From the NCBI RefSeq assembly GCF_031769215.1, contig NW_026782024.1, forward strand, positions 1,054,001 through 1,118,000: a stretch of 64,000 nt of DNA, written 5' to 3'. Below, in pieces: positions 9,554-37,330 of this stretch. Below the pieces are notes generated by a model. The model was given only the letters and a program-made list of their open reading frames with translations, was not told the DNA's origin and did no database searches. This DNA is from Ylistrum balloti (lineage: Eukaryota). Each line of letters starts with the position of its first letter. Position 1 is the stretch's first letter. The position numbers were made by a program, and so were the translations under genes.

Positions 9554-10927
9554 TTATTCGATATCAAAGAATCTGCCGTGAAAGTTGAAAGGAACAGTTG
9601 TTGGCATGTACGATCGGTTGATGACTGTCATGGTTTTAGGGTCAAGCATAAGCAGGTAACTGGCTTTCTTATCCCCGTCAAATGCTGATGACATCAACAC
9701 GCCGTCGTCCTCCTCCTTACTTCCGGGTGTGGCGACGAACCAGGGCTCTGTAAAGTATTGGTGGGGCACAGCATACATCAAGTCTCCTTCATTGTTGCAT
9801 ACATCCTTCTTGACAAGAGCAATGTGACTGAAACCCATCCCGTCGTAGTTGACCACTGTGCCGTAGATGTAACAATACTTTATATGACGATAGTTTTCGT
9901 TGATAACTGGCATTTCCAGTGCGCCGGCGCATGGAGCTTTTGGTCCATTTTCAAAGACTGTTTTTGACACAGTCTTTGTACGAAGGTCAATTGTGTATCG
10001 CTTGAGGACTGGTGTCGACAGAATATCCATCCGAGCTGTTTTATTGAAAAGATATGAAAAGTCAAAATAGTCAAAAGCAAATGGATTTACTTGAGTTGGA
10101 AGATCCATTACAATTTTACCATCTGGCGTTTCGAAAGCGTTGATATGATGAATAACGAAGACTGTCTCCGTCTGTAATGTATGTACCCTTCCTGTCTTTA
10201 TCTCTACAACATATATAGAAGTGTTGGCGTTCCCGTCCCAAACCATTCCACCCTCTACTGAGCAAGTCTCCAGCATTTTCATGATACTGATAGTGTACGG
10301 AGCCGCGATCAGGATAACGTAGTTAGGAGAGACCGAGAACGAATGCATGTAGTGACTTTTTTCCATCTCCCACTCAGCCACCATTTCCGTGTTATCAAGG
10401 GATTTGATCCGGACCACGCTCAAGCGATCTTTCATCCCAGGAATTAGACTCAATGTTTTGATTATTTCAAATCTTGATTGCGTGCCGTATTCTGGAACAG
10501 GATGAGCAGACGACATTTCGCTCTTTTTGCCAAAATTGGAAAATTTTGACGGCGGTGTAGGTGGAAGTACGGAGCCGATACTGTTCAAAGTTGTGAGGTC
10601 GAATTCAAACATTTGCCATATATCACTGACAGCCACCGTCCTGTTGGCATAGTTGATGACGTTCACGTTCATATCATCCATATTCAATGTCATCCATTCA
10701 AATCGTTTGGCTCCATCGTAGGCAGGAATAACCCCTCTGAACGTGAGATAAGGTTCAACATCATTCTCCTGGATGGATGACAAGTAAGATTTTGATTTGA
10801 TTATTTTTGCAGAAAAAAATGCAGATCCGTTTCCAGGAAAAGTCCAGCTGTGAAGCTTTGCGTATCCGTCGAAATAGTTCCGGTATTTCCGACTACCCAT
10901 TTCCAGCTGCCCTGGACCATTCCTGAC
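9554..10927 (-). CDS. Carotenoid cleavage oxygenase (BCO/RPE65/NinaB superfamily), copy 1, large 3' exon
   Basis: Acceptor ttattaag|GTC AGG AAT GGT CCA (VRNGPG). Motifs YFDGYAKLH, SSAHP, YMHSF, HHINAFE, LEMP, FTEPWFV and FHGRF give four Fe-ligand His; 457 codons plus stop. Confidence 0.93.
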   Translation of the reverse strand, partial: VRNGPGQLEMGSRKYRNYFDGYAKLHSWTFPGNGSAFFSAKIIKSKSYLSSIQENDVEPYLTFRGVIPAYDGAKRFEWMTLNMDDMNVNVINYANRTVAVSDIWQMFEFDLTTLNSIGSVLPPTPPSKFSNFGKKSEMSSAHPVPEYGTQSRFEIIKTLSLIPGMKDRLSVVRIKSLDNTEMVAEWEMEKSHYMHSFSVSPNYVILIAAPYTISIMKMLETCSVEGGMVWDGNANTSIYVVEIKTGRVHTLQTETVFVIHHINAFETPDGKIVMDLPTQVNPFAFDYFDFSYLFNKTARMDILSTPVLKRYTIDLRTKTVSKTVFENGPKAPCAGALEMPVINENYRHIKYCYIYGTVVNYDGMGFSHIALVKKDVCNNEGDLMYAVPHQYFTEPWFVATPGSKEEDDGVLMSSAFDGDKKASYLLMLDPKTMTVINRSYMPTTVPFNFHGRFFDIE

Positions 10928-12450
10928 CTTAATAAAGAATATCGATGGATATGTATGTTCTGTGATATGTTGATCCTATCAATCTTTTACGTAATACACA
11001 ATGTTTAAGTTGATTGTATGTATATTTCACAATCCCCTTTGATTATGACAGTATTCTCGAAACGTTATACTTGTATCTTTATTCCCTCGACGTTTAATCC
11101 CCAACACAAGAGAAACGCTTATGCCTGGCATAAAGTCTTTTACTTAGATACCAATACTGTCTTTATAACTGCCCTCGTGAAAACTGATCAACAAGTAGCA
11201 TTTGGATTCTGTGACCAGTAGTCTTTATTGTATACCAATAAATGTGTACTCGATGTTCCCATGAAATCATTCTAAATTTAAAAATTACGAGATTTATGTA
11301 ATGTTGAACTCTCTCTAGATTGTAAAAGCTATTTTGACCAATTTAGATTCCACAAGTCGATTTCCAGGTTTCAATAACTTAGGACCTCAGCATTACTGAC
11401 GAATCCACGGATTTGTGAAAAATGTGTATAATCTTTTTAATTCAGTAGTTTCCCTATCTCTGGAGCGCCACAATAATATAACCGTTTATTCCTTGTTCAG
11501 TAGTTACCCTACCTCTAGAGCGCCACAATAATACGGTAAGTTGCAGAATTATTTTTGTTCAATTCTTTTTCTACGAATTTATATGAAATTATCAATAGAT
11601 ACAAGTTGACATGGAATTAAGTACATGTACAAGTGAATATTGTAATCAAGAACTAACCGTGAAATCAAGTGCCATTAACAATACATATTTTTTTGAAAAC
11701 CATGAAATTTGAGGCTTAAGAAAATATGTTATTTTACAGTGTAAATAACGAATATAAATGAAATACCTGTGTTTGATTTTTATTTAAATGTGCTGTTTAT
11801 ATATCTTTATGTTTACTGAAGACTTTCTGCAGCTTTTTCATGATCGTTCCGGAGTAAATGTCTAGGCGTACACATGTATTAATTATTTCAATCTAAAAAT
11901 GACGGGAATTTCTGTTATTTAGAATTGAATATATTATGTGTGATAAAATTTATATTCAAACCGTAGATCTCATACCGGTCAAATTGTTAGTGGCAAGAAA
12001 TGTTCCAAGGTTTACCTCACCGTCCACATCATATTTAAATCTTTACGAATATTATAGTGTTCTCAATAATAATATAAAAAAAATCATAATATATTTTGGC
12101 TTTAATAAATTTTAACAGTAAACTTAGTCTAATGGAAATATATGAATTTCCACGGGTTATATATACATATATATATATATAATCATCTTTTTAAAAAAAA
12201 AATAGATAAAGTTATACAGGAATGACAGAGAAACCTCCTTAATTTTGTTTGAATCTAATGAAAAGATACACAAACAGCAGGTATGATGTTATATATATCT
12301 AAAATTTGTTTTGTTACCGTTAGAGAACTACACAAGGAAACGGAACATTTTCTGGTTCTACGTCGACAAATAGAGTCGAATGTCCAATTCTCAAATAAAT
12401 CAGAATTTGTGTTGACAGTATTATATAACTTTGTTACAAACTTAACTTAC

Positions 12451-12656
12451 CAATATTCCACGAAGCCATGTTGGTAAAGGTTGTTCGAATTGTATTGGGA
12501 AATTCTCAAAACTTTTGTTATTCGTCACGAATATGTCTTCAAAGCCAGGTGCATCATTGTCTGACTGTGCTACTTTGACCGATGCACAGACATGATACAG
12601 AATCAGGAATGGAACAGCTAGAATAATTAGCAGACAGAGTGATACGAAGCACTGTG
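12451..12656 (-). CDS. CCO copy 1, 5' exon with hydrophobic leader (not in the ORF track)
   Basis: Reads QCFVSLCLLIILAVPFLILYHVCASVKVAQSDNDAPGFEDIFVTNNKSFENFPIQFEQPLPTWLRGIL|gtaagt. It is homologous to exon 1 of copies 2 and 3, and its phase-0 donor matches the acceptor at 10927. There is no in-frame ATG, so an upstream exon is needed; the acceptor cctacag at 12657 is inferred. Confidence 0.85.
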
Positions 12657-13099
12657 CTGTAGGTGAAATAATCTAATCTTTCCTATGACTTTGTAGATAT
12701 TGTTTAAATACAGGTAAATCAGGTCCCATATCTCGTTGTATTTACTAATGGCGAAGTTAACAACAACATAATTTGATACGTTTATGAAAAATATGCTTAA
12801 CATGTAACACAAATCTGCAGAACAATTGATATAATTTTACATAACTTTACATGAAAAAGCTATTTTATACTGCTTTTGAAATCATTATGGGTATCACGCG
12901 ACTTCGTATACAGCCATTCATAAAATGTCCGTTGTTTGATAAAATAAAACTATCATTGTTGTAAACTTTATAAGGAGTCATTTTCATTTTCAAGTTGATA
13001 TGATGACGAACTAGTAATTTGCTTATGAAGACATTTAGATTGTATTGCCTTTATGTCTATACATTTATAATCTTTTATAATTCTATCCATTCTACACAA

Positions 13100-13165
13100 T
13101 TGCGTGGCCGGACACCGTCTTGGTAACGCATTCGTCTACGCCGGTGTTCGATTTCCCGTGCGGTC
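13100..13165 (+). mobile_element. Possible degenerate tRNA-derived SINE head
   Basis: GCGTGGCC, a B-box-like GTTCGATTTCC and a GCGGTCG end resemble tRNA-Arg termini; no clean cloverleaf. Confidence 0.2.
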
Positions 13166-13186
13166 GTTAAAGGGAAGGAGGATGTC

Positions 13187-16100
13187 TATGGACCGATCAG
13201 TGAGTGTGGAGAGTGGATAGGGACCAATCAGACAGTTGGAGGTTTATATTTAGGAACCAATCATTGAGTGTAAAATGTAGGTAATTTTGAGGAGTAGGTA
13301 TTGACCAATCAGAGAGTATGAGGTGTAGATATGTACCAATCAATAAGTGTTAGGAGTAGGCATAGACAAGTTAGACAGTGTGAGTCGTAGATATGGACCA
13401 ATGAGAGAGAGTGAGGTGCAGATATAGACCAATCACTTAGTGTGAGGACTGGGTATGGACAAGTCAGACTGTGTGAGGTGTAGAAATGGACGACCAATGA
13501 GAGAGTGTGACGTGTAGATATGGACCAATGAGATAGTGTGAGGTGAAGATATGGCCCAATCAGAGAGTGTAAGTTGTAGATATGGACCAATCACAAAGTG
13601 TGAGATGTATTAATGGACCAATTAGAGAGATTGAAGTGTAGGTATGGACCAATCAGAGTGTTAGGTGTTTTTATGGACCAATCAGAGAGTGTGAAGTGTT
13701 AGTATAGATCAATCAGTAAGTGTGAGGAACACGCGTAGCTATCGACAATTCACTGAATGATAATCTGTTCATGACAATCTCTGATACAGATATTAAGAAG
13801 CATCTATGTTTTACAAAATGCTACCATTTTCCTTTAAATACAGTTATTTAGTTCACAAACACCAGTGAACATAGCTTTCCTACTGTTACGTTTTAAGTGC
13901 AACAACGTCATGTTTATCCAGGTTTTTATCTTTTCTTTGACAAGCTTTGACGGGGACCTATGTATAATATATAAAAACAGAACGTAAAACACAGAGCATA
14001 GATCATTTGAGTACATAATGGTCAAAGTTTACCTGCTATACAAATGATTTTAATCTAATCTAGTTTATAATCACATCGGGGGTTAGAGGTAATTGCAATT
14101 GTGATTCAGCAATTTTAAAAGATGGGTGTATAAGTGTTGATGTGGACCTGCAGATAGATTATGGTGACATCGGGTAAAGATTAATTGAAAGATAAAAAAA
14201 TAATAAGTATTATCTGATTGATATGATAAAATTATTGACGTCAGGTTACAAATCAGGTTACCGGTGTTCCTCAACGCCTGAAGTGTGAGGAGTAGGTATG
14301 GCCCAATCACTAAGTGTTAGGAAAAGGTATAAACCAATCGCTGGATGTGAAGTGAAGGTATGAAGCGACAAGTAAGTGTGAGGCGTCGGTATGGAATAAT
14401 CATTGAGCGTGAAGTATTGATATGGACCAATCAGAGAGTGTGATGTGTATATATGGACCAATCAGAGAGTGTGATGTGTAGATATGGACCAATCAATAAA
14501 TGTGATGAGTAGGTATGGACCAATCAGAGAGTGTGAGGTGCATATATGGACCAATCACTTAGTGTGAGGAGTAGGTATGGGCAAGGTAGACAGTGTGAGG
14601 TGTAAATATGGGCCAATGAGAGAGTGTTAGGAGTAGGTATGGCCCAATCACTAAGTGTTAGGAAAAGATATAAACCAATCACTGGATGTGAAGTGAAGGT
14701 ATGAAGCGACAAGTAAGTGTGAGGCGTATGTATGGAATAATCATTGAGTGTGAAGTATTGATGCGGACCAATCAGAGAGTGCGATGTGTATATATGGACC
14801 AATCAGAGAGTGTGATGTGTAGATATGGACCAATCAATAAGTGTGAGGAGTAGGTATGGACCAATGAGAGAGTGTGAGGTGCAGATATGGACCAAGCACT
14901 TAGTGTGAGGACTAGGTATGAACCAATCAGATTGTGCAAAGTTTAGGAAAGAACCAATAACTAAATGTGAGGAGTAGTTATGGATCAATCAGTAAGTGTG
15001 AGGAACACGCGTAGCTATCGACAATTCACTGAATGATAATCTGTTCATGGCAATCTCTGATACAGTTATTAAGAAGCATCTATATTTTACAAAATGCTAC
15101 CATTTTCCTTTAAATACAGTGATTTTGTTCACAAACTCTAATGAAAATAGTTTCCTTCTGTTACTTTTTAAGTGCAACAACGTCATGTTTATCCAGGTTT
15201 TTATCTTTTCTTTGACAAGCTTTGATGGGGACCTATGTATAATATATAAATACAGACACAAAACACAGATCATTGTGTACATAAATAAGGTCATAATGGT
15301 CAAGGCTTAGTTGCTATACAGATAATTGTAATCTTATCTAGTTTATAATCACATCGGGGGTTAGAGGTAATTGGAATTGTGATACAGCAAATTTTAAAAG
15401 ATGGGTGTATAAGTGTTGATATGGACCTGCAGATAGATTATGGTGACACCGGGTGAAGATTGATTGAAACGAAAAGAAAATGATAAGTATATATATTACA
15501 ATTACAATAAAGGCAATTAAAACTGATTGATATGATAAAATTATTGACGTCAGGTTACAAAACAGGTTACCGGTGTTACTCGAAGCCTGAAGTGTGGGGA
15601 GTAGGTATGGACCAATCATTAAGTGTAAGAAGTAGGGATGAAGAAACTAGTGAGTGTGAATAGTATATATTGACCAATCTTTGAGTGTGAAGTGTAGGTA
15701 TGGACCAATCAATAAGTGTGAGGAATAAGTATGGAATAATCATTGAGTGTGAAAAGTAACGACCAATCACTAAGAGTTAGGACTAGGTAAGGACCAATCA
15801 ATTTATGTGATTTGTAGATATAGACTAATCACTAAGTGTGAAGGGTAAGTATGGACAAGTCAGACAGTGTGAGGTGTAGATATTGACCAATTAGAGAGTT
15901 TCACATATAGGTATGGACCAATCAGAGAGTGTCAAGTGTAGATATAGACGTATCATATTGAAGTATAGGTATTGACCAATCATTAAGTATTTGGAGTAGA
16001 TATAGACCTATCAGATATTTTGAGTTGTACACGTTGACCAATCAGAGAGTGTGAAGTGTATATATAGACAATCACTAAATAAGAAGAGTAGGCATGGACC

Positions 16101-16760
16101 AATCAGGGAGTGTGAGGTGTAGATATGGACCAATCACAAAGTGTTAGGAATAGGAACGGACCAATCATTAAGCGTAAGAAGTAGGGATGAAGAAACAACC
16201 AGTGACTTTGAAGAATAGATATGAACCAATCGGTAAGTGTGAGGAGTATGTATGGACCTATCAGATTGTGTGAGTTGTAGACATTAACCAATCCGAGAGT
16301 ATAAAGTGTAAGTATACACCATCACTAAGTGAGAGGAGTAGGTATGGACAAGTCAGACGGTGTGAGGTGTAGACATGGACCAGTCAGTGTGTGTGAAGTG
16401 TAGATATGGACCAATCAGAGATTGTGGAGTGTATGTATAGACCAATCAGTAAGTGTGAGGAAAACGACAATTCACTGAATGATAATCTGTTCATAATGCT
16501 ACAATTTTCCTTTAAATACAGTGATTTAGTTCACAAACACCAGTGAAAATAGCTTTCCTACTGTTATGTTTTAAGTGCAACAACGTCATGTTTATCCGGG
16601 TCTTTATCTTTTCTTTGACAAGCTTTGACGGGGACCTATGTATAATATATAAATACAGACACAAAACACAGAGTATGGATCATTTGAGTACATAATGGTC
16701 AAGGTTAACCTGGTGTACAGATTGTTTTAATCTAATCCAGTTATATAATTACAAATCAGG
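13187..16760. repeat. Composite tandem triplication: 31-bp CCAAT-containing minisatellite blocks alternating with a ~550-bp spacer
   Basis: Unit ~GGACCAATCAGAGAGTGTGAGGTGTAGATAT (starts at 14424, 14455, 14486). The spacer beginning aggaacacgcgtagctatcgacaattcac recurs at ~13724, ~15001 and, shortened, ~16458. Confidence 0.9.
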
Positions 16761-17139
16761 TCCCTCAATGCCCTACACATGGAAAACATTTTCTTTTACA
16801 GTGGTATATCCCACGATGTTCCTGAAAGTCTTGGACGGTGAGAATCTTTTTCAATTTCGGTAAGTATATCTCATAATGTTAATGAAGGTATGGACGGTGA
16901 ACTTAATTGCTTTCAACTCTTGAAGCTTGCGCGCATTTGTTTTTATTTTCGCGGATAAAATTATTCCACGAGCACCTTGAAAGTTGATATATTGATAAGC
17001 TATACATCTACATTTTGATATATAAACCTCACTTTAGACAATGATTTCAAACTTTTCCGCGTCAGTTTATTGTATAATGGTGAAATGCCATTTTTGCTGC
17101 AAGTAGTAACTGATATAATGGAAGTAAACTCATTTTATG

Positions 17140-17645
17140 ATATAATAGAAAATAATGCACTAGAACTACGATATAATATGATATAATATAAAATAATACA
17201 CTAGTACTACGATATAATATGATATAATATAAAATAATACACTAGTACTACGATATAATATGATATAATAAAAAATAATACACTAGTACTACGATATAAT
17301 ATGATATAATATAAAATAATACACAAGTACTATGATATAATATAAAATAATACACAAGTACTACGATATAATATGATATAATATAAAATAATACACTAGT
17401 ACTACGATATAATATGATATAATATAAAATGATACACAAGTACTACGATATAATATGATATAATATAAAATAATACACTAGTACAACGATATAATATGAT
17501 GTAATATAAAATAATACATTAGTACTACGATATAATATGATATGATATAAAATAATACACAAGTACTTTGATATAATATAAAATAATACACTAGTACTAT
17601 GATATAATATGATATAATATAAAATAATACACTAATACTACGATT
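17140..17645. repeat. 41-bp AT-rich minisatellite, ~12 copies
   Basis: Unit TAGTACTACGATATAATATGATATAATATAAAATAATACAC (starts at 17161, 17202). Confidence 0.92.
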
Positions 17646-18169
17646 TGATACACTGTAGTGCAATTCCATCTCCAGAGAAACACAGAGGACATATGAACCA
17701 TAATATATCATTTCTACAAAATAACAAAATAATTATAGTATTAAACAAATTTATTTAGCAAAATGTAAATTTAAGTTATATCCAAAGCCTTGTCGTCATT
17801 ATGCCCAAAGACTTTAGACAGATTATGTGTTTATGTGGCAGAAATACGTGTTGTCAAGTAATTAAGTCAAGTTACCTGGAATAAATGATATCAATATTAT
17901 ATCATTAGATCCTATATGTTTGACAAGTTAGACATGTTTGGTCTGGCTACCTTGATCATTCATCATTATATGGATAACTCATCCTTGTTGGAAATGGTAT
18001 CTAAACCCTTTCTGCATCCTGATACGGAGTCGGTATCAATATACGCACCATAGAACACCCTTTGTACGTATCATACTTCCACCAATGAACAAGAACACTA
18101 CACTTGTGTACTTTACCTCCTTCCATCATAAAAACATCATCATACTTCAACACATATTCTACATTTTCT

Positions 18170-21242: not shown

Positions 21243-21596
21243 CTATCCAAGATGGAGAAGCTCAGTTGGTGAATCAGCATAGGTCATCGGGTCGATCGTC
21301 CCAGTCTGATAACGGTCCTTCCATGTGGCCAGGCGTCTTTCAATATTGGCGTAGTTCTTCTTCCGGGGTTGAATAGTGCCTCCCGCATCTCTCTGAATAT
21401 TGCTGATGTCATTCATGTTCTGTATGTCCTTAAGCGTCTGGATGATGGTGTAGTTGTTGGGGTTGGCATGCAGTGCCTTCTTCTTCAGTCTCCAGAATGT
21501 CCTGTTGCCGTTCCTTCGAATCTGTCTGTAGATGAATCCATTATGTCCGCCTCTTCTGTTGGTGTTGAACTTAACGTTGATCTGAGCGTTAGCCAT
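21243..21596 (-). mobile_element. Internally deleted FLYWCH/Mutator-like (MULE) transposase remnant
   Basis: N-terminal NRRGGHNGFIY..RRNGNRTFWR resembles the start of a FLYWCH domain. It is joined to a MULE-type C-terminus, HANP..IIQTLKDIQ...Q..AGG..QPRKKNY..IERRL..WKDRYQTG..Y.D. The DDE core is absent and no TIRs were identified. Confidence 0.65.
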
Positions 21597-26345: not shown

Positions 26346-26925
26346 TGAAATATGAATCAGTATGATTATCTCTGCGCCAGTGTTTTTTTTTTTTAATTAA
26401 CACTTTGTAGTTAATTACCAGTATATTTCCGCCCTACAACGTCTCATACAGAAATCTAAAGGTAATTTGTACTTGTGGCTGATGCCAGTTGAAAAGGATA
26501 GTACCAAAAGTTCATATTGTCGTCGGTGAATGTTACGACTTGAGAAAAGAAAGATTTGTGTTGTTCTTTACACTTAGATGTACCTTTGATGTCTTAACAG
26601 TAGTCTAATAATTTTGTTGTGTGTAAATGTGACCTTTTTAACATGACATATATATGGTTGTTGTAATAACAAAATATGTGGAATCTTGATATCGTATTTT
26701 TTCTGTTGTTAAAGAGATTACTAACAGTTGTATAAAAGACTTATTATATGTTAAAGCAAATCTGTGGTTATTTTTATTGTTTGTATTCAAGGTGTTCTAT
26801 GATTGATCTCTTTTGTCTTTTTGTACACAATTTCTACTATGTAGTAGGGGTTATAAGATTCATTTGGTCTCTGTAGATGCTTTAACATACTATCTATATT
26901 GATAAAATATAAAGATTGAAGCCGT

Positions 26926-27211
26926 GAGAGTAGGGTATTGAAATTGCATTGAATCTGTGGTATCATTTAAATTGTAGTGTTGAGAGTGTAGTATTGAAAT
27001 TGCATTGAATCTGTGGTATCATTTAAATTGTAGTGTTGAGAGTGTGGTATTGAAATTGCATCGAAGCTGTGGTATCATTTAAATTGTAGTGTTGAGAGTG
27101 TGGTATTGAAATTGCATTGAATCTGTGGTATCATTTAAATTGTAGTGTTGAGAGTGTGGTATTGAAATTGCATTGAAGCTGTGGTATCATTTAAATTGTA
27201 GTGTTGAGAGT
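26926..27211. repeat. 56-bp minisatellite, 5 copies
   Basis: Unit GAGAGTGTGGTATTGAAATTGCATTGAATCTGTGGTATCATTTAAATTGTAGTGTT starting at 26926, 26982, 27038, 27094 and 27150; ~240 bp past the copy-2 stop codon. Confidence 0.95.
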
Positions 27212-27451
27212 TCAAATTAAATCTTTAGGTCTACTGAGAAAAAGTATTTTGCATAAAAAATTATCCGCGTTTCTTATGTTCTTTCATGATAATAAGAAAA
27301 AGGGAGATAATTTAATTGGTTGTTTGACTTTTTATTATGTGCATATATATTTATATTCTCATAACTATAGGAAACGCAACCTGTGCCAGGAATATTAAAA
27401 ACGAAGATAGAGCCATTTAAAAAGAATCATACACTCAATTGTCTCTTGTCT

Positions 27452-28828
27452 CTAATACACGGCGTCGAAAAACCTGCCGTGGAAATTAAAGGGTACTCGT
27501 GTGGGCATGTATGATCGGTTCATGACTGTCATGGTTTTAGGGTCAAGCATAAGTAGGTAACTGGCTTTCTTATCTCCGTCGAAAGCTGAGGACATCAGCA
27601 CGCCGTCATCCTCCTCCTTACCTCCAGGAGCGGGGACGAACCAGGGCTCTGTAAAGTACTGGTGGGGCGCGGCATACATCAGATCTCCGGCGCTGTTACA
27701 CACATCCTTTTTGACAAGGGCAATGTGACTGAACCCTTTACCATTATAGTTAACTACCTGGCCGTAGACGTAACAGTAATTCATATGACGATAATTTTCG
27801 TTGAATACGGGCATTTCTAGTGAGGTGGCACAGGGAGCCTTTGGTCCACTGTTAAAAGACACACGTTGAACATCTTGGGTCTTAATGTCTAAGGTATAAC
27901 GCGTCAAAACTGGTTGCGCCGTCAGGTTGACTCTAGCTGTTTTGTTATGTATATATGCTACGTCGTACAATGCAAAAGCGTATGGATTTGGTTGTGCTGG
28001 AACGTCTAAAACAATTTTGCCGTCGGGAAGTTCAAATGAATTGATGTGATGAACTACGAAGACGTTTTCGGTTTTGAGGGTGTGTACCTTTCCAGTTTTG
28101 ATTTCCACGACATAGAACGTAGCATTGTCCTGAGCGTTCCAGGCCATCCCGCCTTGAACGGAAGCATACTTCAGCATATCATTCATGTTGACGTAATATG
28201 GTGCAGCGAGTAATATGACGTAATTTGGTGTGACTGAAAACGAGTGCATGTATGAAGTTTTGTCGATTTCCCATTCAGCGACGAGCTCACGCCCTGAAAG
28301 AGAAGTGACTCTGACCACGGTCAGCCGTTCCTTTGTACCAGGAATGAGACTAAAGGTGTTGAGGATGTCAAACGTGGATGTTGCGCCGTATTCTGCCACT
28401 GGATGAGCGGTGGACATCACATTTAATCGGCCCAAATTAGAGTACTGTGACGGTGGTCTTGGTGGATCCACAACTCCGATGGTGTCTAGTGTAGAGGGGT
28501 TAATTTCATACACTTTCCAGATGTCGTTCATGGCTACAATATTATTTGAGTAATTGAAAACATTCACGACAGTGTTATCCATGTTCAGCATAAAGGACTC
28601 GTATCGCTCGATCTCTCCAAACGGCGGGTCGACACCTTCGAAAGTGAGGAAGGGTGCTATATCATTCTTCGCAATGGATTCAGTATAAACTCTACTTTGG
28701 ATAAATTTGGCGGAAAAGAATGCAGATCCGTTGCCTGAAAACTTCCAGCTATGAAGTTTCGCAAATCCATCGAAGTAGTGAACGAACTTTCTGTTACCCA
28801 TTTCCACCTTTCCCGCTCCATTCCGTAT
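27452..28828 (-). CDS. Carotenoid cleavage oxygenase copy 2, exon 2
   Basis: Acceptor ttacag|ATA CGG AAT GGA (IRNGAG). Motifs HYFDG, STAHP, YMHSF, HHINSFE, LEMP, FTEPWFV and FHGRF; 458 codons plus stop. Confidence 0.94.
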   Translation of the reverse strand: MRNGAGKVEMGNRKFVHYFDGFAKLHSWKFSGNGSAFFSAKFIQSRVYTESIAKNDIAPFLTFEGVDPPFGEIERYESFMLNMDNTVVNVFNYSNNIVAMNDIWKVYEINPSTLDTIGVVDPPRPPSQYSNLGRLNVMSTAHPVAEYGATSTFDILNTFSLIPGTKERLTVVRVTSLSGRELVAEWEIDKTSYMHSFSVTPNYVILLAAPYYVNMNDMLKYASVQGGMAWNAQDNATFYVVEIKTGKVHTLKTENVFVVHHINSFELPDGKIVLDVPAQPNPYAFALYDVAYIHNKTARVNLTAQPVLTRYTLDIKTQDVQRVSFNSGPKAPCATSLEMPVFNENYRHMNYCYVYGQVVNYNGKGFSHIALVKKDVCNSAGDLMYAAPHQYFTEPWFVPAPGGKEEDDGVLMSSAFDGDKKASYLLMLDPKTMTVMNRSYMPTRVPFNFHGRFFDAVY

Positions 28829-29059
28829 CTGTAATATAGTCACCAGGCATTTTATTTATTGTTAATGTATATATGACAATACCATAATTATCCCCTCTTT
28901 TACTAAGCTTTTTAAAAGTTTTATAAATTATGTGTCAGTTTGCCCTCCATACGAAGTTGTCTACTCTAATACGTAACACAATCCATTGATTATGGTATAT
29001 AGTGAAAGTGGGGCTGGTCAATTACGTTTAGATTTAGGATCTTAAACCGATTTCCATGT

Positions 29060-29560
29060 CATACAGAATTAATGAAAATCTTTAACTGATGTTCATGTCT
29101 CACTGAATTAATGAGAATTTTTAACTGTTGTTCAGGTCAAAATGAATTAATGAGAATCTTAAACTGATGTCAATGTCATACTGAATTAATGAGGATCTTA
29201 AACTGATGTCCATGTTATACTGTATTAATGAGAGTCAAACTGATGTCATTGTCATACTGAATTAAGGAGAATCTTTAACTGATGTCCATGTTATACTGAA
29301 TTAATGAGAGTCAAACTGATGTCATTGTCATACTGAATTAATGATAATCTTTAATTGGTGTTCATGTCATACTGAATTAATAAGAATCTTAAACTGATAT
29401 CAATGTCATACCGAATTAATGAGAATCTTTAACTGATGTCCAGGTCATACTAAGTTAATTACAATCAAACTAATGTCCATGTTATACTAAATTAATAAGA
29501 ATCTTAAACTGATGTTCATGACATATTGAATTAATGAGAATACCAAACTGATGTTCAGGT
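29060..29560. repeat. ~39-bp intronic minisatellite in copy 2, with a shorter degenerate homologue in the copy-3 intron (~34955-35140)
   Basis: Unit ~TTAAACTGATGTCCATGTCATACTGAATTAATGAGAATC. Both arrays follow the shared flank ctactctaatacgtaacaca. Confidence 0.88.
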
Positions 29561-30712
29561 TACATGACGTTAGTGAAAATCGTCCAATCATTTGATATGA
29601 TTCAGAATGCTCAATCATACCAAATGATCGAAATCGTTTAACGAAGTCAACTGCCTCCTATATATGATCATATATTTCGTTTGATTTCTAAATAAAACCC
29701 CTAAATTCCCCTTCTCTTCGTAGGTGATGTGGTGCCGTAGTCAAACTTTTACTTATTTTTTCAGTTGTGAAAATAATTCTTAGCTGTCGTAGGTCTTTTG
29801 CATTTTCCGCATACATCAACTTCTTTGTTGGGGAATAAATTTGCTATTTGATGAAACCCAATATTTGTCGTATGCTTCATATCATGGGTAAGGTATGTTG
29901 CTTATCACTTTGAACTCCTATATAGCATATCCCTAAAGTAGGATACTGTATCGGGAAAGTACCTGTGGAAAAGTAGTAATGGTCATAGTATAACACCTGT
30001 TGGTCTTTTGTTAGCCGCGAAAAAATTCGCCAAATTCAATAATATATTCGAAAAACGACAATGACAATCGTTATCTTAAACCCTGAAGCACATGTTAATA
30101 TATAAATTACAAATATTATACTAAGTATGACAAAGCACCAATATTCTAAAGAAGCAATCTATCAAAATATTTCTTACAATATTCAGTGACCTTAAATATT
30201 CTATCCATAATTTTCTTAAGAGTATTTCTACCCACCTACCCATTTGGGTATTTGAGCACACACACACACACACAAACACACACACATACTTCCCCATTCC
30301 TCCTCTTCCCACGAGCACACACGTCCCTTAAAATTGCTGATGACTGCCCTTGTGATTTACACGTTCCAATATCACATTGCGTGGTAGTGTCTCAGTTGTT
30401 TTGAGGTGTAAACGTACAGCTCGTTTAAAATGTTCTACCTATTTGCTCGTCCGCCCAACTCGGCTCTATCTTGAGATTCCTGTATTCTAATCATTAATCG
30501 TACAAAACTTTTTTCTTGTTCTGGAATATCTAAACGCAGGTTACAGCGTCCTGAACCGAACTAATGACTGCCAATTGACTAAATGGAGAATTCAATCAAG
30601 TCGCTAGTGTTCACAAATTTACATTGTTGTTTACACTTTAAGAAAATGAACCCATATTCTCCTTAGCTACTAGTGGTACAACAGCAATTTTCATTGTTGT
30701 CTATATACTTAC

Positions 30713-30898
30713 CAGCGTTCCACGAAGCCATTTTGGTAGAGGATTCTCGAACTCGATCGGGTGATTTTCGAAGGTTTGATTGTTGGTGAAAAACCACTCG
30801 TCAAATCCTGGACAATCGTCATCTTGCGGTGGATTGGCAGCGGAGCACAGACCCAGACCAACCAGGATCAAGACAAGGATGGCACGAAATCTCTCCAT
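30713..30898 (-). CDS. CCO copy 2, exon 1 with signal peptide (spliced protein 520 aa)
   Basis: MERFRAILVLILVGLGLCSA-ANPPQD...PLPKWLRGTL|gtaagt. The phase-0 splice to 28828 restores the family motif WLRGTL-IRNG. Confidence 0.92.
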
Positions 30899-32114
30899 GT
30901 CTGACTCTTGTTCAATTGTGGTTGATTATATCACAAAAATCTACAGACCTTGGACTGGTCTTACAAACCTGTATACCGGTTTATCCATTGTATCCTGTCA
31001 TCAGCTATATTTAGAGATCTGATTGATAACCGTATTATAAAGATATAAAATCGTCACGTACGAGATGTTAAATACATAATATATACGTGTGCATAGGCAT
31101 TGCAATCTTGTCATATCATACATATCTATCCATAATAACGCAGTAATCAGTGAGGCCTTCAATACATATATAATATTTTCCCATTTTATCATATGTAGGT
31201 GTTTTCAGACTAACGATGTTGCGAATATCAGCGAGAGTAATCCAACATACGTACGTATTTTTACGGAGTAAGACAAAATAAGTTGATAATTCATTGTTTA
31301 CATAAAGCAATACTTTAATGCATTGAAACAGTTTCAAAGATTGAAGACAACATGGGTATACTTTTGATCTTCTAAGAGGCAAAATATCATTAAACAGTTA
31401 ACTCATATCACATATCAGATACAGATGGACAGCTGGATATTCTAAGTTGATTTCCTTACAATGTTAAGAGAGCCAGAGAATAGTAACTAGAAATAGTATA
31501 CCAATTCTTAAAAGATTCTCTTTTCACAGGTTATGAAAGTAAGAAGTAAAGTAAGTATTTTGTAACAGAATTGCAAAGACCATTCTTAAAAAAGTACCTT
31601 TTCAAAAATTTTAATATGGTTACACAATTCCGTCATAAGTTCTCATTCATAGAACTTGCTAAACGTTTTTTTAAATCTAAAACTGGACATGTGATTTTTA
31701 ACTAATTGTTTAACTATTTTCTCATTTACAATTTTCTGTAAGCTCCCTAAGCGTTTTTTAAAAACCATTTTTGAATAACAAAGCATATTTGTTTTTTCAC
31801 ACTTTTAGATTTTAAATTTTAATTGTATCTTAATTTAATGTTACTGACGTTTTGGCATAAGTTATCCCGTGACATGAATATACATGTATTATGTAACTAA
31901 GAACATTGAAAAAGGATTACAGTAATACACATTAAATGGCAAACTTCAATTAAGATGCCGTTTCAATGACTTTCTTTACTAATTATGTTATTTAACCAGC
32001 AGATAGATATTAAGCTCTTGCTAACAATACCAACAACAATCAACCAGAAATCAAAACCTTTACTCTTCAAAAATCTTCAGAACATCCTTCATAAGCAAGC
32101 ACTTCAAATGTTTC

Positions 32115-33491
32115 TTATAACACATTGTCGAAAAACCTGCCGTGGAAATTAAAGGGTACCCGTGTGGGCATGTATGATCGGTTGATGACTGTCATGGTTT
32201 TAGGGTCAAGCATAAGCAGGTAACTGGCTTTCTTATCTCCGTCGAATGCCGAGGACATCAACACGCCGTCGTCTTCCGCCTTACCTCCAGGAGCGGGGAC
32301 GAACCAGGGCTCCGTAAAGTACTGGTGGGGCACGGCATACATCAAATCTCCGGCGCTGTTACACACATCCTTTTTGACAAGGGCAACATGACTGAACCCT
32401 TTACCATTATAGTTAACTACCTGGCCGTAGACGTAACAGTAATTCATATGACGATAATTTTCGTTGAATACGGGCATTTCTAGTGAGGTGGCACAGGGAG
32501 CCTTTGGTCCACTGTTAAAAGACACACGTTGAACATCTTGGGTCTTAATGTCTAAGGTATAACGCGTCAAAACTGGTTGCGCCGTTAGGTTGACTCTAGC
32601 TGTTTTGTTATGTATATATGCTACGTCGTACGATGCAAAAGCGTATGGATTTGGTTGTGCTGGAACGTCTAAAACAATTTTGCCGTCGGGAAGTTCAAAT
32701 GAATTAATGTGATGAACTACGAAAACGTTTTCGGTTTTGAGGGTGTGTACCTTTCCAGTTTCGATTTCCACGACATAGAACGTAGCATTGTCCTGAGCGT
32801 TCCAAACCATCCCGCCTTGAACGGAAGTATATTTCAGCATATTATCCATGTTAACGTAATATGGTGCAGCGAGCAATATGACGTAATTTGGTGTGACTGA
32901 AAACGAGTGCATGTATGAAGTTTTGTCGATTTCCCATTCAGCGACGAGCTCGCGACCTTCAAGAGAAGTGATTCGAACTACTGAAAGACGCCCCTTCTTG
33001 CCGGGAATTAGACTGACAGTATTAAGGATAACAAACGCGGATGTTGTGCCGTATTCTGCCACTGGATGTGCGGTTGACATCTCATTTAATCGACCCAAAT
33101 TGGAGTACTTAGACTGTGGAATTGGTGGACCCACAATTCCGATGGTGTCTAGTGTAGAGGGGTTAATTTCATACACTTCCCAAATGTCGTTCGTGGCTAC
33201 AATGTTATTTGTGTAACTGAAAACATTCACGACAGTGTTATCAATCCTATGCATGAAGGCCTCGTATCGTTCTATCTCTCCAAACGGAGGGGTTACACCA
33301 TCGAAAGTAAGGTAGGGTGCTATATCTTTCTTCGCAATGGATTCAGTATAAAATTTACTTTGGATAAATTTGGCGGAAAAGAATGCAGATCCGTTGCCTG
33401 AAAACTTCCAGCTATGAAGTTTCGCAAATCCATCGAAGTAGTGAACGAACTTTCTGTTACCCATTTCCACCTTTCCCGCTCCATTCCGTAT
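32115..33491 (-). CDS. Carotenoid cleavage oxygenase copy 3, exon 2
   Basis: Same acceptor and motifs as copy 2, offset by 4663 bp; 458 codons plus stop. Confidence 0.94.
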   Translation of the reverse strand: MRNGAGKVEMGNRKFVHYFDGFAKLHSWKFSGNGSAFFSAKFIQSKFYTESIAKKDIAPYLTFDGVTPPFGEIERYEAFMHRIDNTVVNVFSYTNNIVATNDIWEVYEINPSTLDTIGIVGPPIPQSKYSNLGRLNEMSTAHPVAEYGTTSAFVILNTVSLIPGKKGRLSVVRITSLEGRELVAEWEIDKTSYMHSFSVTPNYVILLAAPYYVNMDNMLKYTSVQGGMVWNAQDNATFYVVEIETGKVHTLKTENVFVVHHINSFELPDGKIVLDVPAQPNPYAFASYDVAYIHNKTARVNLTAQPVLTRYTLDIKTQDVQRVSFNSGPKAPCATSLEMPVFNENYRHMNYCYVYGQVVNYNGKGFSHVALVKKDVCNSAGDLMYAVPHQYFTEPWFVPAPGGKAEDDGVLMSSAFDGDKKASYLLMLDPKTMTVINRSYMPTRVPFNFHGRFFDNVL

Positions 33492-35391
33492 CTGTAATAT
33501 AGTCACCAAGCATTTTTAACATTGTAAATGTATAAATGACATTACCGTTACTTTTTCCCCTTTTGCTAGGCTTCTGAAGGATCTGTTGTACAGGCAATCA
33601 TTCTGATGACTAATGTTTTGAAAGCCATACCTCATTTCCAAGGAGAAAATATATAAATATCAAAAATGGAAAGAAAGCGATAAATCTGTGTGCTCGTTTT
33701 CAAATTGCTGAACTTCGGTAGTACTCTTGGTGTATTTTAGATATTTTTCACTCTAAAACCTTCTCTTATTTCATATTCTTAGTACTTTGTGATATTTTAT
33801 CGTGTTCATCATCATCTGTTCCTTTTTGTTTGAACACTTGATATTGTTTTCTTCAAACAAGTAAGCAAAATCCTACTAGTTTAAATTGTTGTATGTTTTC
33901 ACAATTATTGTCATAGATGACAAATGAAATTATAACAAAACATCGTAATTTAACCTTACCTTTGAATGTTAATCGACCATGTTTTTGCTGACTTTCTTCT
34001 GTACTCAATACCAATAGACATTATTTTACTGATATATAGACTGATTATTACTATGAAATCAAAACGATGGGTCAGTAAACTGTTGTTTTTTTTCATTTTA
34101 TTTTTGAGTTACTTCCCTTGAGCAAACAATAAAAATCAATGTTAATAATTTTCGTTTTTTTCTATAATATTACAACCAAGAGTAAACAAATTATTTGAAC
34201 GTATAAAATAAAATAACACTGGAAAATAAACAATAAATAATTATCATTTGTGATATTCTGAACTTTAAGTGCCTTAAAATCATAATAGTCACAGTTAAAT
34301 CAAAGAAATTAAAATTGAATAATTCTGCCTGGTGGCATAAAAAAAACACTTAAATTACAGATGCAAGAAGAAAATTACTTTTGTTAACAATTTTTTGCTA
34401 TTTTCATGGTTACTGAATTATTTCCCTTTTCAATGTAAATGAAATTCTGAAATTTACTTAGAGCAATAACTCTTAACAAATTAAACAGTTACAAGAACAT
34501 AACCTCTATGCTATAGTAAATACTGGAACTTACATAAACAGAGTTGTATATGTAATCTTTTTATAAAAAATGATTTATCAAAATTATCAAACTCTTGTGG
34601 ACATGTCGTGATCTGGTTTTGCCGATAACGGGCCGGCTTAAGTCGTAAATAGTATCATTTTCCATGATTAAATCAAAACAAACTATTTTCTATGACACAG
34701 TGATGATTTTGAACTTAAAATAATCTAAAAGTCAGAATAATATGTACTGAATTTTCTCCTTTATCAATTTCCTATCTCCCTTAGACCAGAATTCTTTACA
34801 ACTTGAAAACGTCACCAGAGCAGATCCTGAAAGGTCTTATACTCTATATGTCAGTTTGGCTTGTATACGAATTAGGCTACTCTAATACGTAACACATTCT
34901 ATGGATTATAGCATAACATGAAAGTGAGACGTGTTGATTTCGTTTTGAAGTTTATAAAGAATCTTAAACTGATGTCCATGCCCTACTAAATTAATGAGAA
35001 TCAAACTTCTGATCCAGTTTAAGAATTAATTAGACTTAAACTAATGTCCATATCATACTAAATTAATGTGAATTTTTAACTAATATCTATGTTATAAATA
35101 TTTAATGAGACTCAAAGTGATATCAATACCATACTGAATTTACTGGTAGTGCCTCTGTTGTTTTCAGGTGTAATCTCGATACCTATTTTCTCGTCCGCAC
35201 ACCTCGGCTCTATTTTGAAATCACTGTATAGTAATCCCTACACATGCAAAACTTTTTTTCTTTTTCCGGAATATCTAAAGCCAGCATTCAACGTCCTGTA
35301 TCGAACCAATGACTCTGTCAATTGACTGAATGGAGAATTCACCGATATAAACCCATATTCTCCTCAACTACTAGACGGAAAATATACTTAC

Positions 35392-35577
35392 TAGCGTTCC
35401 ACGAAGCCATTTTGGTAGAGGATTCTCGAACTCGATCGGATGATTTTCGAAGGTTTGATTGTTGGTGGAAAACCACTCGTCAAATCCAGGACAATCGCCA
35501 TCTTGTGGTGGATTGGCTGCGGAGCACAGACCCAGACCGACCAGAAGCAACACAAGAATGGCACGAAGTATCTCCAT
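35392..35577 (-). CDS. CCO copy 3, exon 1 with signal peptide (spliced protein 520 aa)
   Basis: MEILRAILVLLLVGLGLCSA-ANPPQD...PLPKWLRGTL|gtaagt, phase 0. Confidence 0.92.
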
Positions 35578-35739
35578 GTCTGTGTCCTGTCAAGTCGTGG
35601 GTGACGATTACATATACTTTGTAGATTTCATACAAAAACGATGATTGGAGATCTGAATGATAACCTATTACAAAGATTCAAGGTCTCAACGTACGTCAAT
35701 GTAGAATGTAGAATGATATCGTTTAATGATAAACTGATA

Positions 35740-36195
35740 ATATTTGTGAGACTTCAAATTACATCTAAATCAGATTATATTTAGGAAAGTTAGAGAACAA
35801 AAACTGACCAACCAAAGAAATTAAAGGATACCTAATTAGTATGCATAGATATTAACAGATGACGCTGATTGCTGAACTCAGTCTTATGTGCCCTAATATG
35901 CATCTGCTGACCAAGTTTCATCTAAATCGGATTATATATAGGGAAGTTAGAGCATGGAAATGAACCGACCAGTGAAATCAAAGGATACCTCATTAGTACG
36001 CATAATTATAAACAGATGGCACTGATATTCACTCTCAGTCTTAATGACCCAAAGATGCATCTGCTGACCACGTTTCACCCAAATTGAATGATATTTGGGG
36101 ATGTTAGAACACGGAAACGAAAGTGTGACGGACGGACGGACGGACAAACCCAAATTTATATCCGCCGTTCAGGTGAAAGCTGGGGATAATAATCA
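35740..36195 (+). mobile_element. pearl/HINE (Helentron-associated)-like non-autonomous element, 5' end unclear
   Basis: 157-bp core repeats (starts at 35762, 35919, 36076), then (GACG)n at ~36127-36145, then an imperfect terminal hairpin TATCC..GGATA. This is the layout described for bivalve CvA/pearl-type elements. Confidence 0.7.
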
Positions 36196-37162
36196 ACAGA
36201 GAATATCCAAGAGATCTAACTCAACCTTTAGGAAAATACATCAGCTAGGGTTTGACACGTTTTCTTTCATTGTTTAAATAATTCAATACTTTAATGCATT
36301 GAAACAGTGTCAAATGTTTAAGACAACCTAGGTATAATTCTGTATCTCTAAAAGAGAAATAACCATTAAACAGTTAACTCATATCATATATCATATACAG
36401 ATTGACAGCTGAATATTGTTAGTTGATTCTCCTTCATTGCTTTTATTGTTTGCTACAATATCTTAATTCTTCGTTAAAGTGTATGGAGGATCAGACGACT
36501 ACTTCTGTTTTTGATATTTAAAAGAAACTGTAAAAGTGTCAAGTGAGATTAATATTTTGCAATAAACTTTTGAACCTATTCTTTAAAAAAAATCACAAAG
36601 TAAGAAGTAAAGTAAGTATTTTGTAACAAAAACCATTCATAAAACGTACTTTTTCAATTTTTTAGAATTGTTACATTCTGCTGTAATCTCTCATTCACAG
36701 AACTTGTAAAACGTATCTTTTAATAAAAAAAAACTGGGCATGTGATGTCTATAGCGAAATTGTGTAACCATTTTCTCATTTGCAATTTTCTGCAAACGCC
36801 CAAAGGGTTTCTTAAAAACGTTTTGAATAACAAATTATATTTGCAGATTTGTTTTTTCACAAATTTAAATGTATCTTAATTTAATGTTACTGACGTTTTG
36901 GCATAAGTTATCCCGTGACATGAATATACATGTATTATGTAACTAAGAACATTGAAAAAGGATTACAGTAATACACATTAAATGGCAAACTTCAATTAAG
37001 ATGCCGTTTCAATGACTTTCTTTGCTAATTGTGTTATTTCACCAGCAGATAGATATTAAGCTCTTGATAACAATACCAACTAAAATTACCCAGAAATCAA
37101 AACCTATACTGTTCATAAATCTTTAGAAAATTGTTCATAAACAAGCACTTCAAATGTTTGTT

Positions 37163-37330
37163 TTATATATATTGTCGAAAAACCTGACGTGGAAATAAAG
37201 GGTAACAGTGTGGCATGTACGATCGGTAGATGACTCATGGTTTTAGGGTCAAGCATAAGCAGATAGCTGATGACATGAGCTCGCCGACGTCCTCCTGTAG
37301 ATGTGGGGACGAACCAGGCCCCAGTGAAGA
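37163..37330 (-). pseudogene. Decayed 3' fragment of a fourth CCO copy
   Basis: Matches the copy-3 C-terminus (WFVP..., SYLLMLDPKTM, ..GRFFD) with deletions and frameshifts. The downstream flank 36285-37160 is paralogous to 31288-32115. Confidence 0.88.

What the first reader, a model, noticed from the sequence alone, without database searches (positions are those of the whole stretch)
9554..37330. Tandem cluster of apparently secreted or lumenal carotenoid cleavage oxygenases
Seen: after splicing, copies 2 and 3 begin with a classic signal peptide (MERFRAILVLILVGLGLCSA-ANP) fused to a full CCO domain with four Fe-ligand His. Each of the three proteins has 6-7 N-X-S/T sequons. Five sequon positions are shared by all three copies (NQT/NKS, NGS, NAT/NTS, NKT, NRS), even though copy 1 is well diverged. 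Established: BCO1 is cytosolic, BCO2 mitochondrial, and RPE65 binds the cytosolic face of the ER; these enzymes use Fe(II). Inference: this is an expanded family acting extracellularly or in the secretory lumen on dietary carotenoids or other alkenes, for example in the gut, haemolymph or mantle/shell pigmentation. Invertebrate BCO-like clades have been described, so novelty must be checked.
Basis: partly seen in the sequence, partly recalled or inferred. Interest (0 to 1): 0.85.

Follow-up and report, generated by a model that had tools for sequence, protein, structure and literature searches.

The report
Scallop secreted-type BCOL carotenoid oxygenase cluster

Summary
The window comes from the scallop Ylistrum balloti. 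On its minus strand lie three two-exon RPE65-family genes and a decayed C-terminal fragment.

- **Gene models:** my spliced models for copies 2 and 3 equal RefSeq XP_060066218.1 and XP_060066196.1. Each is 520 aa with an N-terminal signal-peptide-like segment and four Fe-ligand His.
- **Sequons:** the counts are 6/7/6, and five positions are shared by all three copies.
- **Copy 1:** exon 1 has no in-frame ATG, and the database model starts in exon 2. Only two copies clearly encode a signal peptide.
- **Family:** these are BCOL-clade carotenoid cleavage dioxygenases. The best solved-structure match is lancelet BCOLg (PDB 9plv, 339 bits), against 117-129 bits for C. elegans BCMO-1, RPE65 and NinaB.
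- **Shared BCOL hallmarks:** VDPPF in place of PDPCK, the Asp at the first second-shell position, and the Cys pair that forms the BCOLg disulfide. That pair is kept in 109 of 110 family proteins.
- **Prior work:** signal peptides in mollusc and lancelet BCOLs were published in 2017. Secretion of BCOLg was shown in 2020. Its N-glycans, disulfide, beta-carotene cleavage and gut expression were reported in an October 2026 preprint.

Sequon counts alone barely exceed chance. No mollusc BCOL has been tested experimentally in the papers I could search.

The parts
9554..10927 (-). Copy 1, exon 2: 457 codons plus stop, holding nearly the whole CCO domain.
   Evidence: The ORF is intact and matches Pfam RPE65 at E 3e-72. 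The AG acceptor is at 10929-10928. dN/dS is 0.09 against the P. maximus orthologue.
12451..12672 (-). Copy 1, exon 1 reading frame. It encodes a hydrophobic signal-like stretch and the PLPTWLRGIL strand but has no in-frame ATG.
   Evidence: Translation shows a TAG followed by an open frame with no Met. The GT donor is at 12450. In the DNA alignment the P. maximus start codon falls on a non-ATG codon (GTA) here. The database model P0005 starts at a Met in exon 2.
27452..28828 (-). Copy 2, exon 2: 458 codons plus stop.
   Evidence: The spliced product equals P0001 / XP_060066218.1.
30713..30898 (-). Copy 2, exon 1: 62 codons. Codons 1-20 (30839-30898) form the predicted signal peptide MERFRAILVLILVGLGLCSA.
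   Evidence: Sequence and GT donor were read. The hydrophobic core scores 3.58. The AF2 model has a helix at residues 2-19 and pLDDT below 50 at residues 21-24.
32115..33491 (-). Copy 3, exon 2: 458 codons plus stop.
   Evidence: It is 92% identical in DNA to copy 2 exon 2.
35392..35577 (-). Copy 3, exon 1: 62 codons. Codons 1-20 (35518-35577) form the predicted signal peptide MEILRAILVLLLVGLGLCSA.
   Evidence: The spliced product equals P0121 / XP_060066196.1. Exon 1 dN/dS against copy 2 is 0.145.
37165..37328 (-). Decayed remnant of the last ~55 codons of a fourth copy, carrying frameshifts and stops.
   Evidence: tblastn hits. It is 86% identical in DNA to the copy 2 3' end. Translation shows stops.

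Best explanation
The region is a tandem array of BCO-like (BCOL clade) carotenoid cleavage dioxygenase genes of the scallop Ylistrum balloti.

Copies 2 and 3 are recent duplicates, 91% identical in protein. I infer the following route for them. The precursor enters the ER through a cleavable signal peptide of about 20 residues. It forms the BCOL-specific disulfide (Cys414-Cys439 in copy 2) and is N-glycosylated. It then leaves the cell as a soluble seven-bladed-propeller Fe(II) enzyme. By analogy with lancelet BCOLg, it most likely cleaves dietary algal carotenoids outside cells, in the digestive lumen or haemolymph.

Copy 1 is an older paralogue with an intact catalytic exon. It has lost the start codon in its signal-peptide exon, so it is either freshly disabled or starts translation somewhere not visible in the sequence.

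Shown here: gene structure, family membership, and conservation of the signal-like N-terminus, the Cys pair and the catalytic residues. Inferred: secretion, glycan occupancy, substrate and site of action.
For: - **Domain and catalytic residues:** RPE65 domain at E about 1e-77, with four His in columns that are His in 108-110 of 110 family proteins.
- **Closest solved structure:** 9plv, BCOLg, at 339 bits. The next are archaeal NdCCD at 183, C. elegans BCMO-1 at 129, and RPE65 and NinaB at 117.
- **Fold:** AF2 model with pLDDT 93.4 and pTM 0.90, matching CCD propellers at TM 0.8-0.9.
- **Tree:** the mollusc clade holding all three copies is sister to the lancelet BCOL clade that includes BCOLg.
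- **BCOL hallmarks:** copy 2 has VDPPF and no family member examined has PDPCK. The Cys pair falls in the same columns as BCOLg C422/C449 and is kept in 109 of 110 proteins. The Asp167 equivalent is kept in 110 of 110.
- **Signal-like N-termini:** found in 54 of 71 family proteins that have an N-terminus, by a strict heuristic.
- **Other targeting signals:** there is no other hydrophobic segment and no KDEL-type C-terminus.
- **Selection:** purifying, with dN/dS 0.09-0.25, including exon 1.
- **Transcript support in a relative:** RNA-derived contigs from a related scallop join the signal-peptide exon to the main exon at the predicted junction.
- **Published experiments on BCOLg:** secretion, four N-glycans, disulfide, beta-carotene cleavage and gut transcripts.
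Against: - No signal-peptide predictor was available. The call rests on a hydrophobicity and -3/-1 heuristic.
- There is no RNA-seq or proteomic evidence for these genes in this species.
- Sequon number is near chance. None of the four BCOLg glycosylation sites is a sequon in the same column in the scallop copies.
- The second Glu-to-Asp second-shell change of BCOLg is absent; the scallop copies keep Glu.
- The substrate is unknown for any mollusc BCOL.
- Copy 1 lacks a start codon for its signal peptide.
Confidence: 0.78

Rival explanations
1. The proteins enter the secretory pathway but stay inside the cell. They would reside in the ER, Golgi or a lysosome-like digestive vacuole lumen, or be held by an uncleaved signal anchor, and act on endocytosed algal material. 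Bivalve digestive cells digest food intracellularly.
For: The sequence shows only ER entry. Bivalve digestion is largely intracellular in digestive-gland cells (my general knowledge, not tested). The 2017 paper itself first read the peptides as possible ER targeting.
Against: The hydrophobic core is only about 13 residues and is followed by a small-residue C-S-A motif. There is no KDEL/HDEL ending and no second hydrophobic segment. BCOLg is released into the medium by HEK293 cells.
Confidence: 0.12
2. The enzymes are secreted, but their physiological substrates are not intact C40 carotenoids. Candidates are apocarotenoids, stilbenoid or other alkene-containing algal metabolites.
For: The superfamily includes stilbene- and apocarotenoid-cleaving members. 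Tunnel residues differ from BCOLg at three of the mapped positions: T327 to V/I, L409 to M, and T429 to V. The BCOLg tunnel is described as wide and possibly promiscuous.
Against: BCOLg cleaves beta-carotene. A scallop CCO homologue, PyBCO-like 1, is reported to cleave beta-carotene and to control muscle carotenoid colour, though I could not check which clade it belongs to.
Confidence: 0.12
3. Copy 1 is still a working gene. Its start would lie in an unannotated upstream exon spliced to the CAG acceptor just 5' of the hydrophobic stretch, or it would use a non-AUG start, or the assembly has an error there.
For: Exon 2 is fully intact with all catalytic residues, and dN/dS is 0.09 against its orthologue. 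The in-frame hydrophobic stretch is preserved. A pyrimidine-rich CAG acceptor-like site sits at 12657-12670.
Against: There is no in-frame ATG between the upstream TAG and the donor. The orthologous start position is not ATG. The database model begins at a Met in exon 2, which would drop the signal peptide and the first strand.
Confidence: 0.4
4. The hydrophobic N-terminus is not used, and the proteins are cytosolic like BCO1.
For: There is no direct expression or localisation evidence for this species.
Against: The signal-like N-terminus recurs across mollusc, lancelet and more distant homologues. Exon 1 is under purifying selection. The near-invariant Cys pair is a crystallographic disulfide in BCOLg. 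The PDPCK palmitoylation motif of intracellular metazoan CCOs is missing.
Confidence: 0.03

Closest known systems
Lancelet BCOLg (Branchiostoma floridae XP_002601288.1 / PDB 9plv), BCOL clade of carotenoid cleavage dioxygenases (Poliakov 2017; Uppal 2020; Uppal et al. preprint 2026)
   Same: - It is the best solved-structure match, at 339 bits and about 36% identity.
- It shares the N-terminal signal peptide, the identical VDPPF motif in place of PDPCK, and the lack of the long metazoan blade IV loop (no insertion relative to BCOLg).
- The Cys pair lies in the same columns as the C422-C449 disulfide.
- Asp replaces the first second-shell Glu, and the four His ligands are present.
   Different: - The scallop copies keep Glu where BCOLg has Asp408.
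- None of the four BCOLg glycosylation sites is a sequon in the same column. The scallop NGS lies three residues before BCOLg N98.
- Pectinids have an extra conserved Cys (C395 in copy 2), and copies 2 and 3 have an N-terminal Cys29.
- Activity, secretion and tissue are untested for the scallop proteins.
Molluscan BCOL proteins listed in Poliakov et al. 2017 (Crassostrea, Aplysia, Octopus, Lottia)
   Same: They belong to the same molluscan clade. Lottia P0030 (522 aa) groups with the scallop copies in a clade with 99% support. The 2017 table lists a 522-aa Lottia BCOL with TargetP signal-peptide score 0.97.
   Different: Those are single predicted sequences. Here there is a pectinid-specific tandem expansion with a recent duplicate pair and a start-less copy. 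I could not confirm that P0030 is the very accession in the table.
Canonical metazoan CCOs: BCO1, BCO2 (including scallop PyBCO2), RPE65, NinaB, C. elegans BCMO-1
   Same: They share the seven-bladed propeller fold (TM about 0.8) and the four-His Fe(II) centre.
   Different: - They score only 117-129 bits.
- They carry PDPCK and three second-shell Glu, and they are intracellular.
- PyBCO2 has 12 exons and 550 aa, against 2 exons and 520 aa here.
Nitrosotalea devanaterra CCD (PDB 6vcf) and Synechocystis ACO
   Same: NdCCD is the second-best sequence match (183 bits) and the best structural match available to Foldseek (TM 0.92 by target length). It also has short loops.
   Different: In the NdCCD alignment, the only one of the two printed, there is no signal peptide and the two disulfide Cys are Arg and Leu. 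Both are prokaryotic cytosolic enzymes.

Membership tests
BCOL clade of carotenoid cleavage dioxygenases | RPE65/CCO domain with four Fe-ligand His | tested here: met
   Pfam PF03055 at E 1e-72 to 1e-77. The His columns are His in 108-110 of 110 family proteins, and all three copies have them.
BCOL clade of carotenoid cleavage dioxygenases | Closer in sequence to lancelet BCOLs than to canonical metazoan CCOs | tested here: met
   BCOLg scores 339 bits, against 129 for BCMO-1 and 117 for RPE65 and NinaB. In the tree the mollusc clade is sister to the lancelet BCOLs. No canonical CCO sequences were available to include as an outgroup.
BCOL clade of carotenoid cleavage dioxygenases | N-terminal secretory signal peptide | tested here: met
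   Copies 2 and 3 have a charged n-region, a 13-residue hydrophobic core and a C-S-A cleavage motif. This is a heuristic only; SignalP was not available. Copy 1 has the hydrophobic stretch in frame but no ATG.
BCOL clade of carotenoid cleavage dioxygenases | No PDPCK palmitoylation motif; a VDPPF-type helix in its place | tested here: met
   Copy 2 has VDPPF, copy 3 VTPPF and copy 1 VIPAY. No Cys occurs in this segment in any member examined.
BCOL clade of carotenoid cleavage dioxygenases | Lacks the long 'metazoan loop' of blade IV (RPE65 371-400) | tested here: met
   The alignment to BCOLg across this region shows only gaps of one or two residues. The proteins are about 500 aa when mature. 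There was no direct alignment to RPE65.
BCOL clade of carotenoid cleavage dioxygenases | Intramolecular disulfide (BCOLg C422-C449) | tested here: met
   The Cys residues fall in the same alignment columns (C414/C439 in copy 2; C426/C451 in copy 1). The pair is kept in 109 of 110 family proteins. Bond formation itself was not tested.
BCOL clade of carotenoid cleavage dioxygenases | Second-shell Glu replaced by Asp at two positions (BCOLg D167, D408) | tested here: inconclusive
   The first position is Asp in 110 of 110 proteins. At the second position the three scallop copies have Glu, as do 16 of 20 pectinid and 4 of 8 lancelet proteins. The preprint says 'several other BCOL proteins' carry the change, so it is not strictly defining.
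BCOL clade of carotenoid cleavage dioxygenases | N-glycosylation and secretion of the mature enzyme | not testable with these tools
   Sequons are present. NGS and NAT are each kept in 16 of 20 pectinids and NKT in 20 of 20. Occupancy and export need experiments.
BCOL clade of carotenoid cleavage dioxygenases | Oxidative cleavage of carotenoids | not testable with these tools
   This is known for BCOLg. It has not been assayed for any scallop member of this cluster.
Canonical metazoan BCO1/BCO2/RPE65/NinaB | PDPCK motif and three second-shell Glu | tested here: not met
   There is no PDPCK, and the first second-shell position is Asp. [quoted passage not shown]

The most novel reading that the evidence does not exclude
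The pectinid expansion of BCOL genes has at least six paralogue lineages, of which this array holds two. It may be an extracellular carotenoid-clearing system whose members are tuned to different algal xanthophylls and which sets tissue colour. On this reading the scallop colour gene PyBCO-like 1 would be a secreted BCOL, and carotenoid colour in scallops would be decided outside cells, in the digestive lumen or haemolymph, rather than in the muscle. The pectinid-specific Cys395, paired with Cys29 in copies 2 and 3, could add a second disulfide.
Probability: 0.2. Interest if true: 0.5.

Novelty: new member of a known kind. Interest (0 to 1): 0.2.

Why it matters
It matters little for basic novelty. 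The idea of a secreted, glycosylated animal carotenoid oxygenase is already in print, with a crystal structure.

The cluster is still useful in four ways:
- It shows that the BCOL hallmarks (signal peptide, disulfide pair, first Asp, VDPPF) hold in a bivalve expansion.
- It shows that the second Glu-to-Asp change is not universal in the clade.
- It supplies natural paralogue pairs, 91% and 65% identical, for mapping substrate specificity.
- Scallop flesh and gonad colour is a commercial trait tied to carotenoid oxygenases, so knowing that these enzymes are probably extracellular would guide breeding and gene-editing targets.

Tried and rejected
- **Sequon enrichment as evidence for secretion:** rejected as weak. 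Counts do not exceed composition shuffles for the three proteins. The family-wide excess is only 1.19-fold, and sequon Asn are not kept better than other Asn.
- **An ATG for the copy 1 signal peptide:** none is in frame. Alignment to the paralogue and to the P. maximus orthologue puts their start codons on non-ATG codons. The 5' UTR of a related scallop's transcript was too diverged to reveal an upstream exon.
- **A tree rooted with canonical BCO/RPE65/NinaB:** not possible, because no tool returned those sequences by reference. I relied on PDB bit scores and motifs instead.
- **Foldseek against PDB:** it did not return BCOLg, because that library stops at April 2026. The sequence search of PDB did return it.
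- **Geometry checks on the AF2 model:** no coordinates are returned, so Cys-Cys distances and sequon exposure could not be measured.
- **Li et al. 2019 on PyBCO-like 1:** the paper is not held, so its clade could not be checked.
- **Mollusc BCOL in secretome or shell-matrix proteomics:** the literature search found nothing.
- **Other scans:** Rfam and tRNA scans of the window were empty, and earlier scan notes held nothing nearby.

Full report
**What is there**

The window has no N and is AT-rich (31-43% GC). Three long minus-strand ORFs of 448, 463 and 464 aa all match Pfam RPE65 (PF03055) over nearly the whole profile, at E 1e-72 to 1e-77.

Two short upstream ORFs encode Met plus a hydrophobic stretch and end at GTAAGT donors. 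The large ORFs are preceded by TTACAG acceptors. Splicing 30713-30898 to 27452-28828, and 35392-35577 to 32115-33491, gives two 520-aa proteins.

These proteins are identical to RefSeq XP_060066218.1 and XP_060066196.1 of the scallop Ylistrum balloti, on scaffold JAUZWB010000032.1.

Copy 1 has exon 2 at 9554-10927 and an exon 1 homologue ending at a GT donor after 12451. A frameshifted remnant of about 160 nt from a fourth copy's 3' end lies at 37165-37328.

- Copy 2 starts MERFRAILVLILVGLGLCSA|ANP. Copy 3 starts MEILRAILVLLLVGLGLCSA|ANP.
- Both have a charged n-region, a hydrophobic core of about 13 residues, and small residues at -3 and -1.
- There is no other hydrophobic segment and no KDEL-type ending.
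- The AlphaFold2 model (pLDDT 93.4, pTM 0.90) has a detached helix at residues 2-19 and its only very-low-confidence stretch at residues 21-24, on the predicted cleavage site.
- Sequons number 6, 7 and 6, and five positions are shared, as stated.
- The counts do not exceed composition shuffles (P 0.11-0.26).
- Sequon Asn are not kept significantly better than other Asn.
- Across 110 family proteins the sequon excess is only 1.19-fold.
- Some sites are nevertheless well conserved. NGS and NAT are each kept in 16 of 20 pectinids, and NKT in 20 of 20 pectinids and 5 of 8 lancelet proteins.

**Copy 1**

In the frame that encodes the hydrophobic stretch and PLPTWLRGIL, a TAG is followed by 74 codons with no Met.

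In the DNA alignment the P. maximus orthologue's start codon falls on GTA. The start of the Ylistrum paralogue P0008 falls on an out-of-frame GTG.

The database protein for this gene (P0005, 448 aa) begins at a Met inside exon 2. That product would lack the signal peptide and the first strand.

Exon 2 is intact, with dN/dS 0.09 against the P. maximus orthologue. The loss is therefore either recent, compensated by an unseen upstream exon, or an assembly error. Only copies 2 and 3 clearly encode secretory precursors.

**What family it is**

The best match among solved structures is 9plv, "Beta-carotene oxygenase like g (BCOLg)" of the lancelet, at 339 bits. The next are archaeal NdCCD at 183, C. 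elegans BCMO-1 at 129, ACO at about 125, and RPE65 and NinaB at 117.

Protein P0096 (531 aa) carries every residue the BCOLg papers name: the ALS|VT cleavage site, N98, N110, N383, N438, C422, C449, D167 and D408. I used it as BCOLg.

Results against an alignment of 110 family proteins, unless noted:
- The scallop Cys414/Cys439 fall in the BCOLg C422/C449 columns. That pair is kept in 109 of 110 proteins.
- The Asp167 equivalent is kept in 110 of 110 proteins.
- The Asp408 equivalent is Glu in the three copies and in 16 of 20 pectinids.
- Copy 2 has the identical VDPPF motif where canonical metazoan enzymes have PDPCK.
- There is no insertion relative to BCOLg at the "metazoan loop".

In a 48-protein tree, a well-supported mollusc clade holding all three copies is sister to the lancelet BCOLs. 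Copies 2 and 3 are each other's closest relatives and sister to an Argopecten gene. Copy 1 groups with Pecten and Mizuhopecten genes.

Foldseek confirms the CCD propeller fold.

**Wider context**

A signal-like N-terminus occurs in 54 of 71 family proteins that have an N-terminus, by strict criteria. Most of the rest are near misses or truncated models.

RNA-derived contigs from a related scallop carry an uninterrupted 517-aa ORF with the signal peptide. They map across the predicted exon 1/exon 2 junction.

The duplicated unit of copies 2 and 3 is about 4.3-4.7 kb. A further paralogue, P0008, lies about 62 kb beyond the window start on the same strand. P. maximus has a matching pair 52 kb apart.

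**What is already known**

- Poliakov et al. 2017 defined the BCOL clade. They noted the missing PDPCK motif and tabulated TargetP signal peptides for Crassostrea, Aplysia, Octopus, Lottia and lancelet proteins (PMC5643517).
- Uppal et al. 2020 speak of "the secreted BCOL subfamily" and saw BCOLg leave HEK293F cells (PMC7221588).
- A preprint of 30 October 2026 gives the 2.4 A structure. It reports four occupied N-glycan sites, the C422-C449 disulfide, the Asp second shell, symmetric beta-carotene cleavage, and transcripts of six BCOLs in lancelet gut. It proposes secretion into the gut to digest algal carotenoids (PMC13734108).
- The canonical scallop BCO2 has 12 exons, 550 aa, PDPCK and three Glu (PMC11012205).
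- A scallop CCO homologue, PyBCO-like 1, controls muscle carotenoid colour and cleaves beta-carotene. I could not read that paper, so its clade is unknown.

**Verdict**

The best evidence is not the sequons. It is the recurrent signal peptide, the near-invariant disulfide pair, and the experiments on BCOLg.

The finding is a new, unstudied member cluster of a known kind. Secretion, glycan occupancy, substrate and tissue remain untested for any mollusc BCOL in the literature I could search.

Noticed in passing
window 13288-13727, 14282-15005, 15590-16461: Arrays of a 31-bp satellite whose unit contains a CCAAT-box-like GGACCAATCAG lie between copy 1 and copy 2, with about 65 units in all. They give the strong positive GC skew of that stretch.
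   Followed up: no
window 60955-62169 (+): A 404-aa ORF with weak UNC-93 (E 3.5e-9) and MFS_1 matches. It is probably a large exon of an UNC-93-like transporter gene.
   Followed up: partly
proteins P0102-P0119; P0114 on a 19.6-kb JGI contig: These are distant RPE65-family proteins (28-33% identity) from environmental eukaryote assemblies. Most have signal-like N-termini, and all keep the BCOLg disulfide Cys pair and the Asp167 equivalent. P0114 sits on a gene-dense contig next to a Rubisco-LSMT substrate-binding gene, so it is probably from an alga or protist. In algae with secondary plastids such a peptide could instead be part of a plastid-targeting signal.
   Followed up: partly
L001 (scaffold JAUZWB010000032.1, 991716-994710) and L002/L008 (P. 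maximus LR736848.1): A fourth intact Ylistrum BCOL paralogue (P0008) lies about 62 kb outside the window on the same strand. P. maximus has the matching pair P0003/P0007 52 kb apart, so the array is part of an older, larger pectinid cluster. Copy 1 is closer to P0008 at synonymous sites (dS 0.56) than to its protein-tree neighbour in P. maximus (dS 1.23). That could reflect gene conversion.
   Followed up: partly
copy 2/3 protein residues 29 and 395 (window about 30812-30814 and 27830-27832 for copy 2): Cys395 is conserved in 18 of 18 pectinid BCOLs, where other members have Phe, Tyr or Leu. Cys29 occurs only in copies 2 and 3 and their Argopecten orthologue, giving these mature proteins four Cys. 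A second disulfide is possible but could not be checked, because model coordinates are not returned.
   Followed up: partly
window 21243-21596 (-), 1858-2262 (+), and minisatellites at 17136-17644, 26925-27211, 29039-29554, 42650-43233, 44179-44613, 46941-47873: Orphan ORFs with no Pfam match, probably transposon debris, and many minisatellite arrays fill the intergenic space. One array lies in the copy 2 intron.
   Followed up: no
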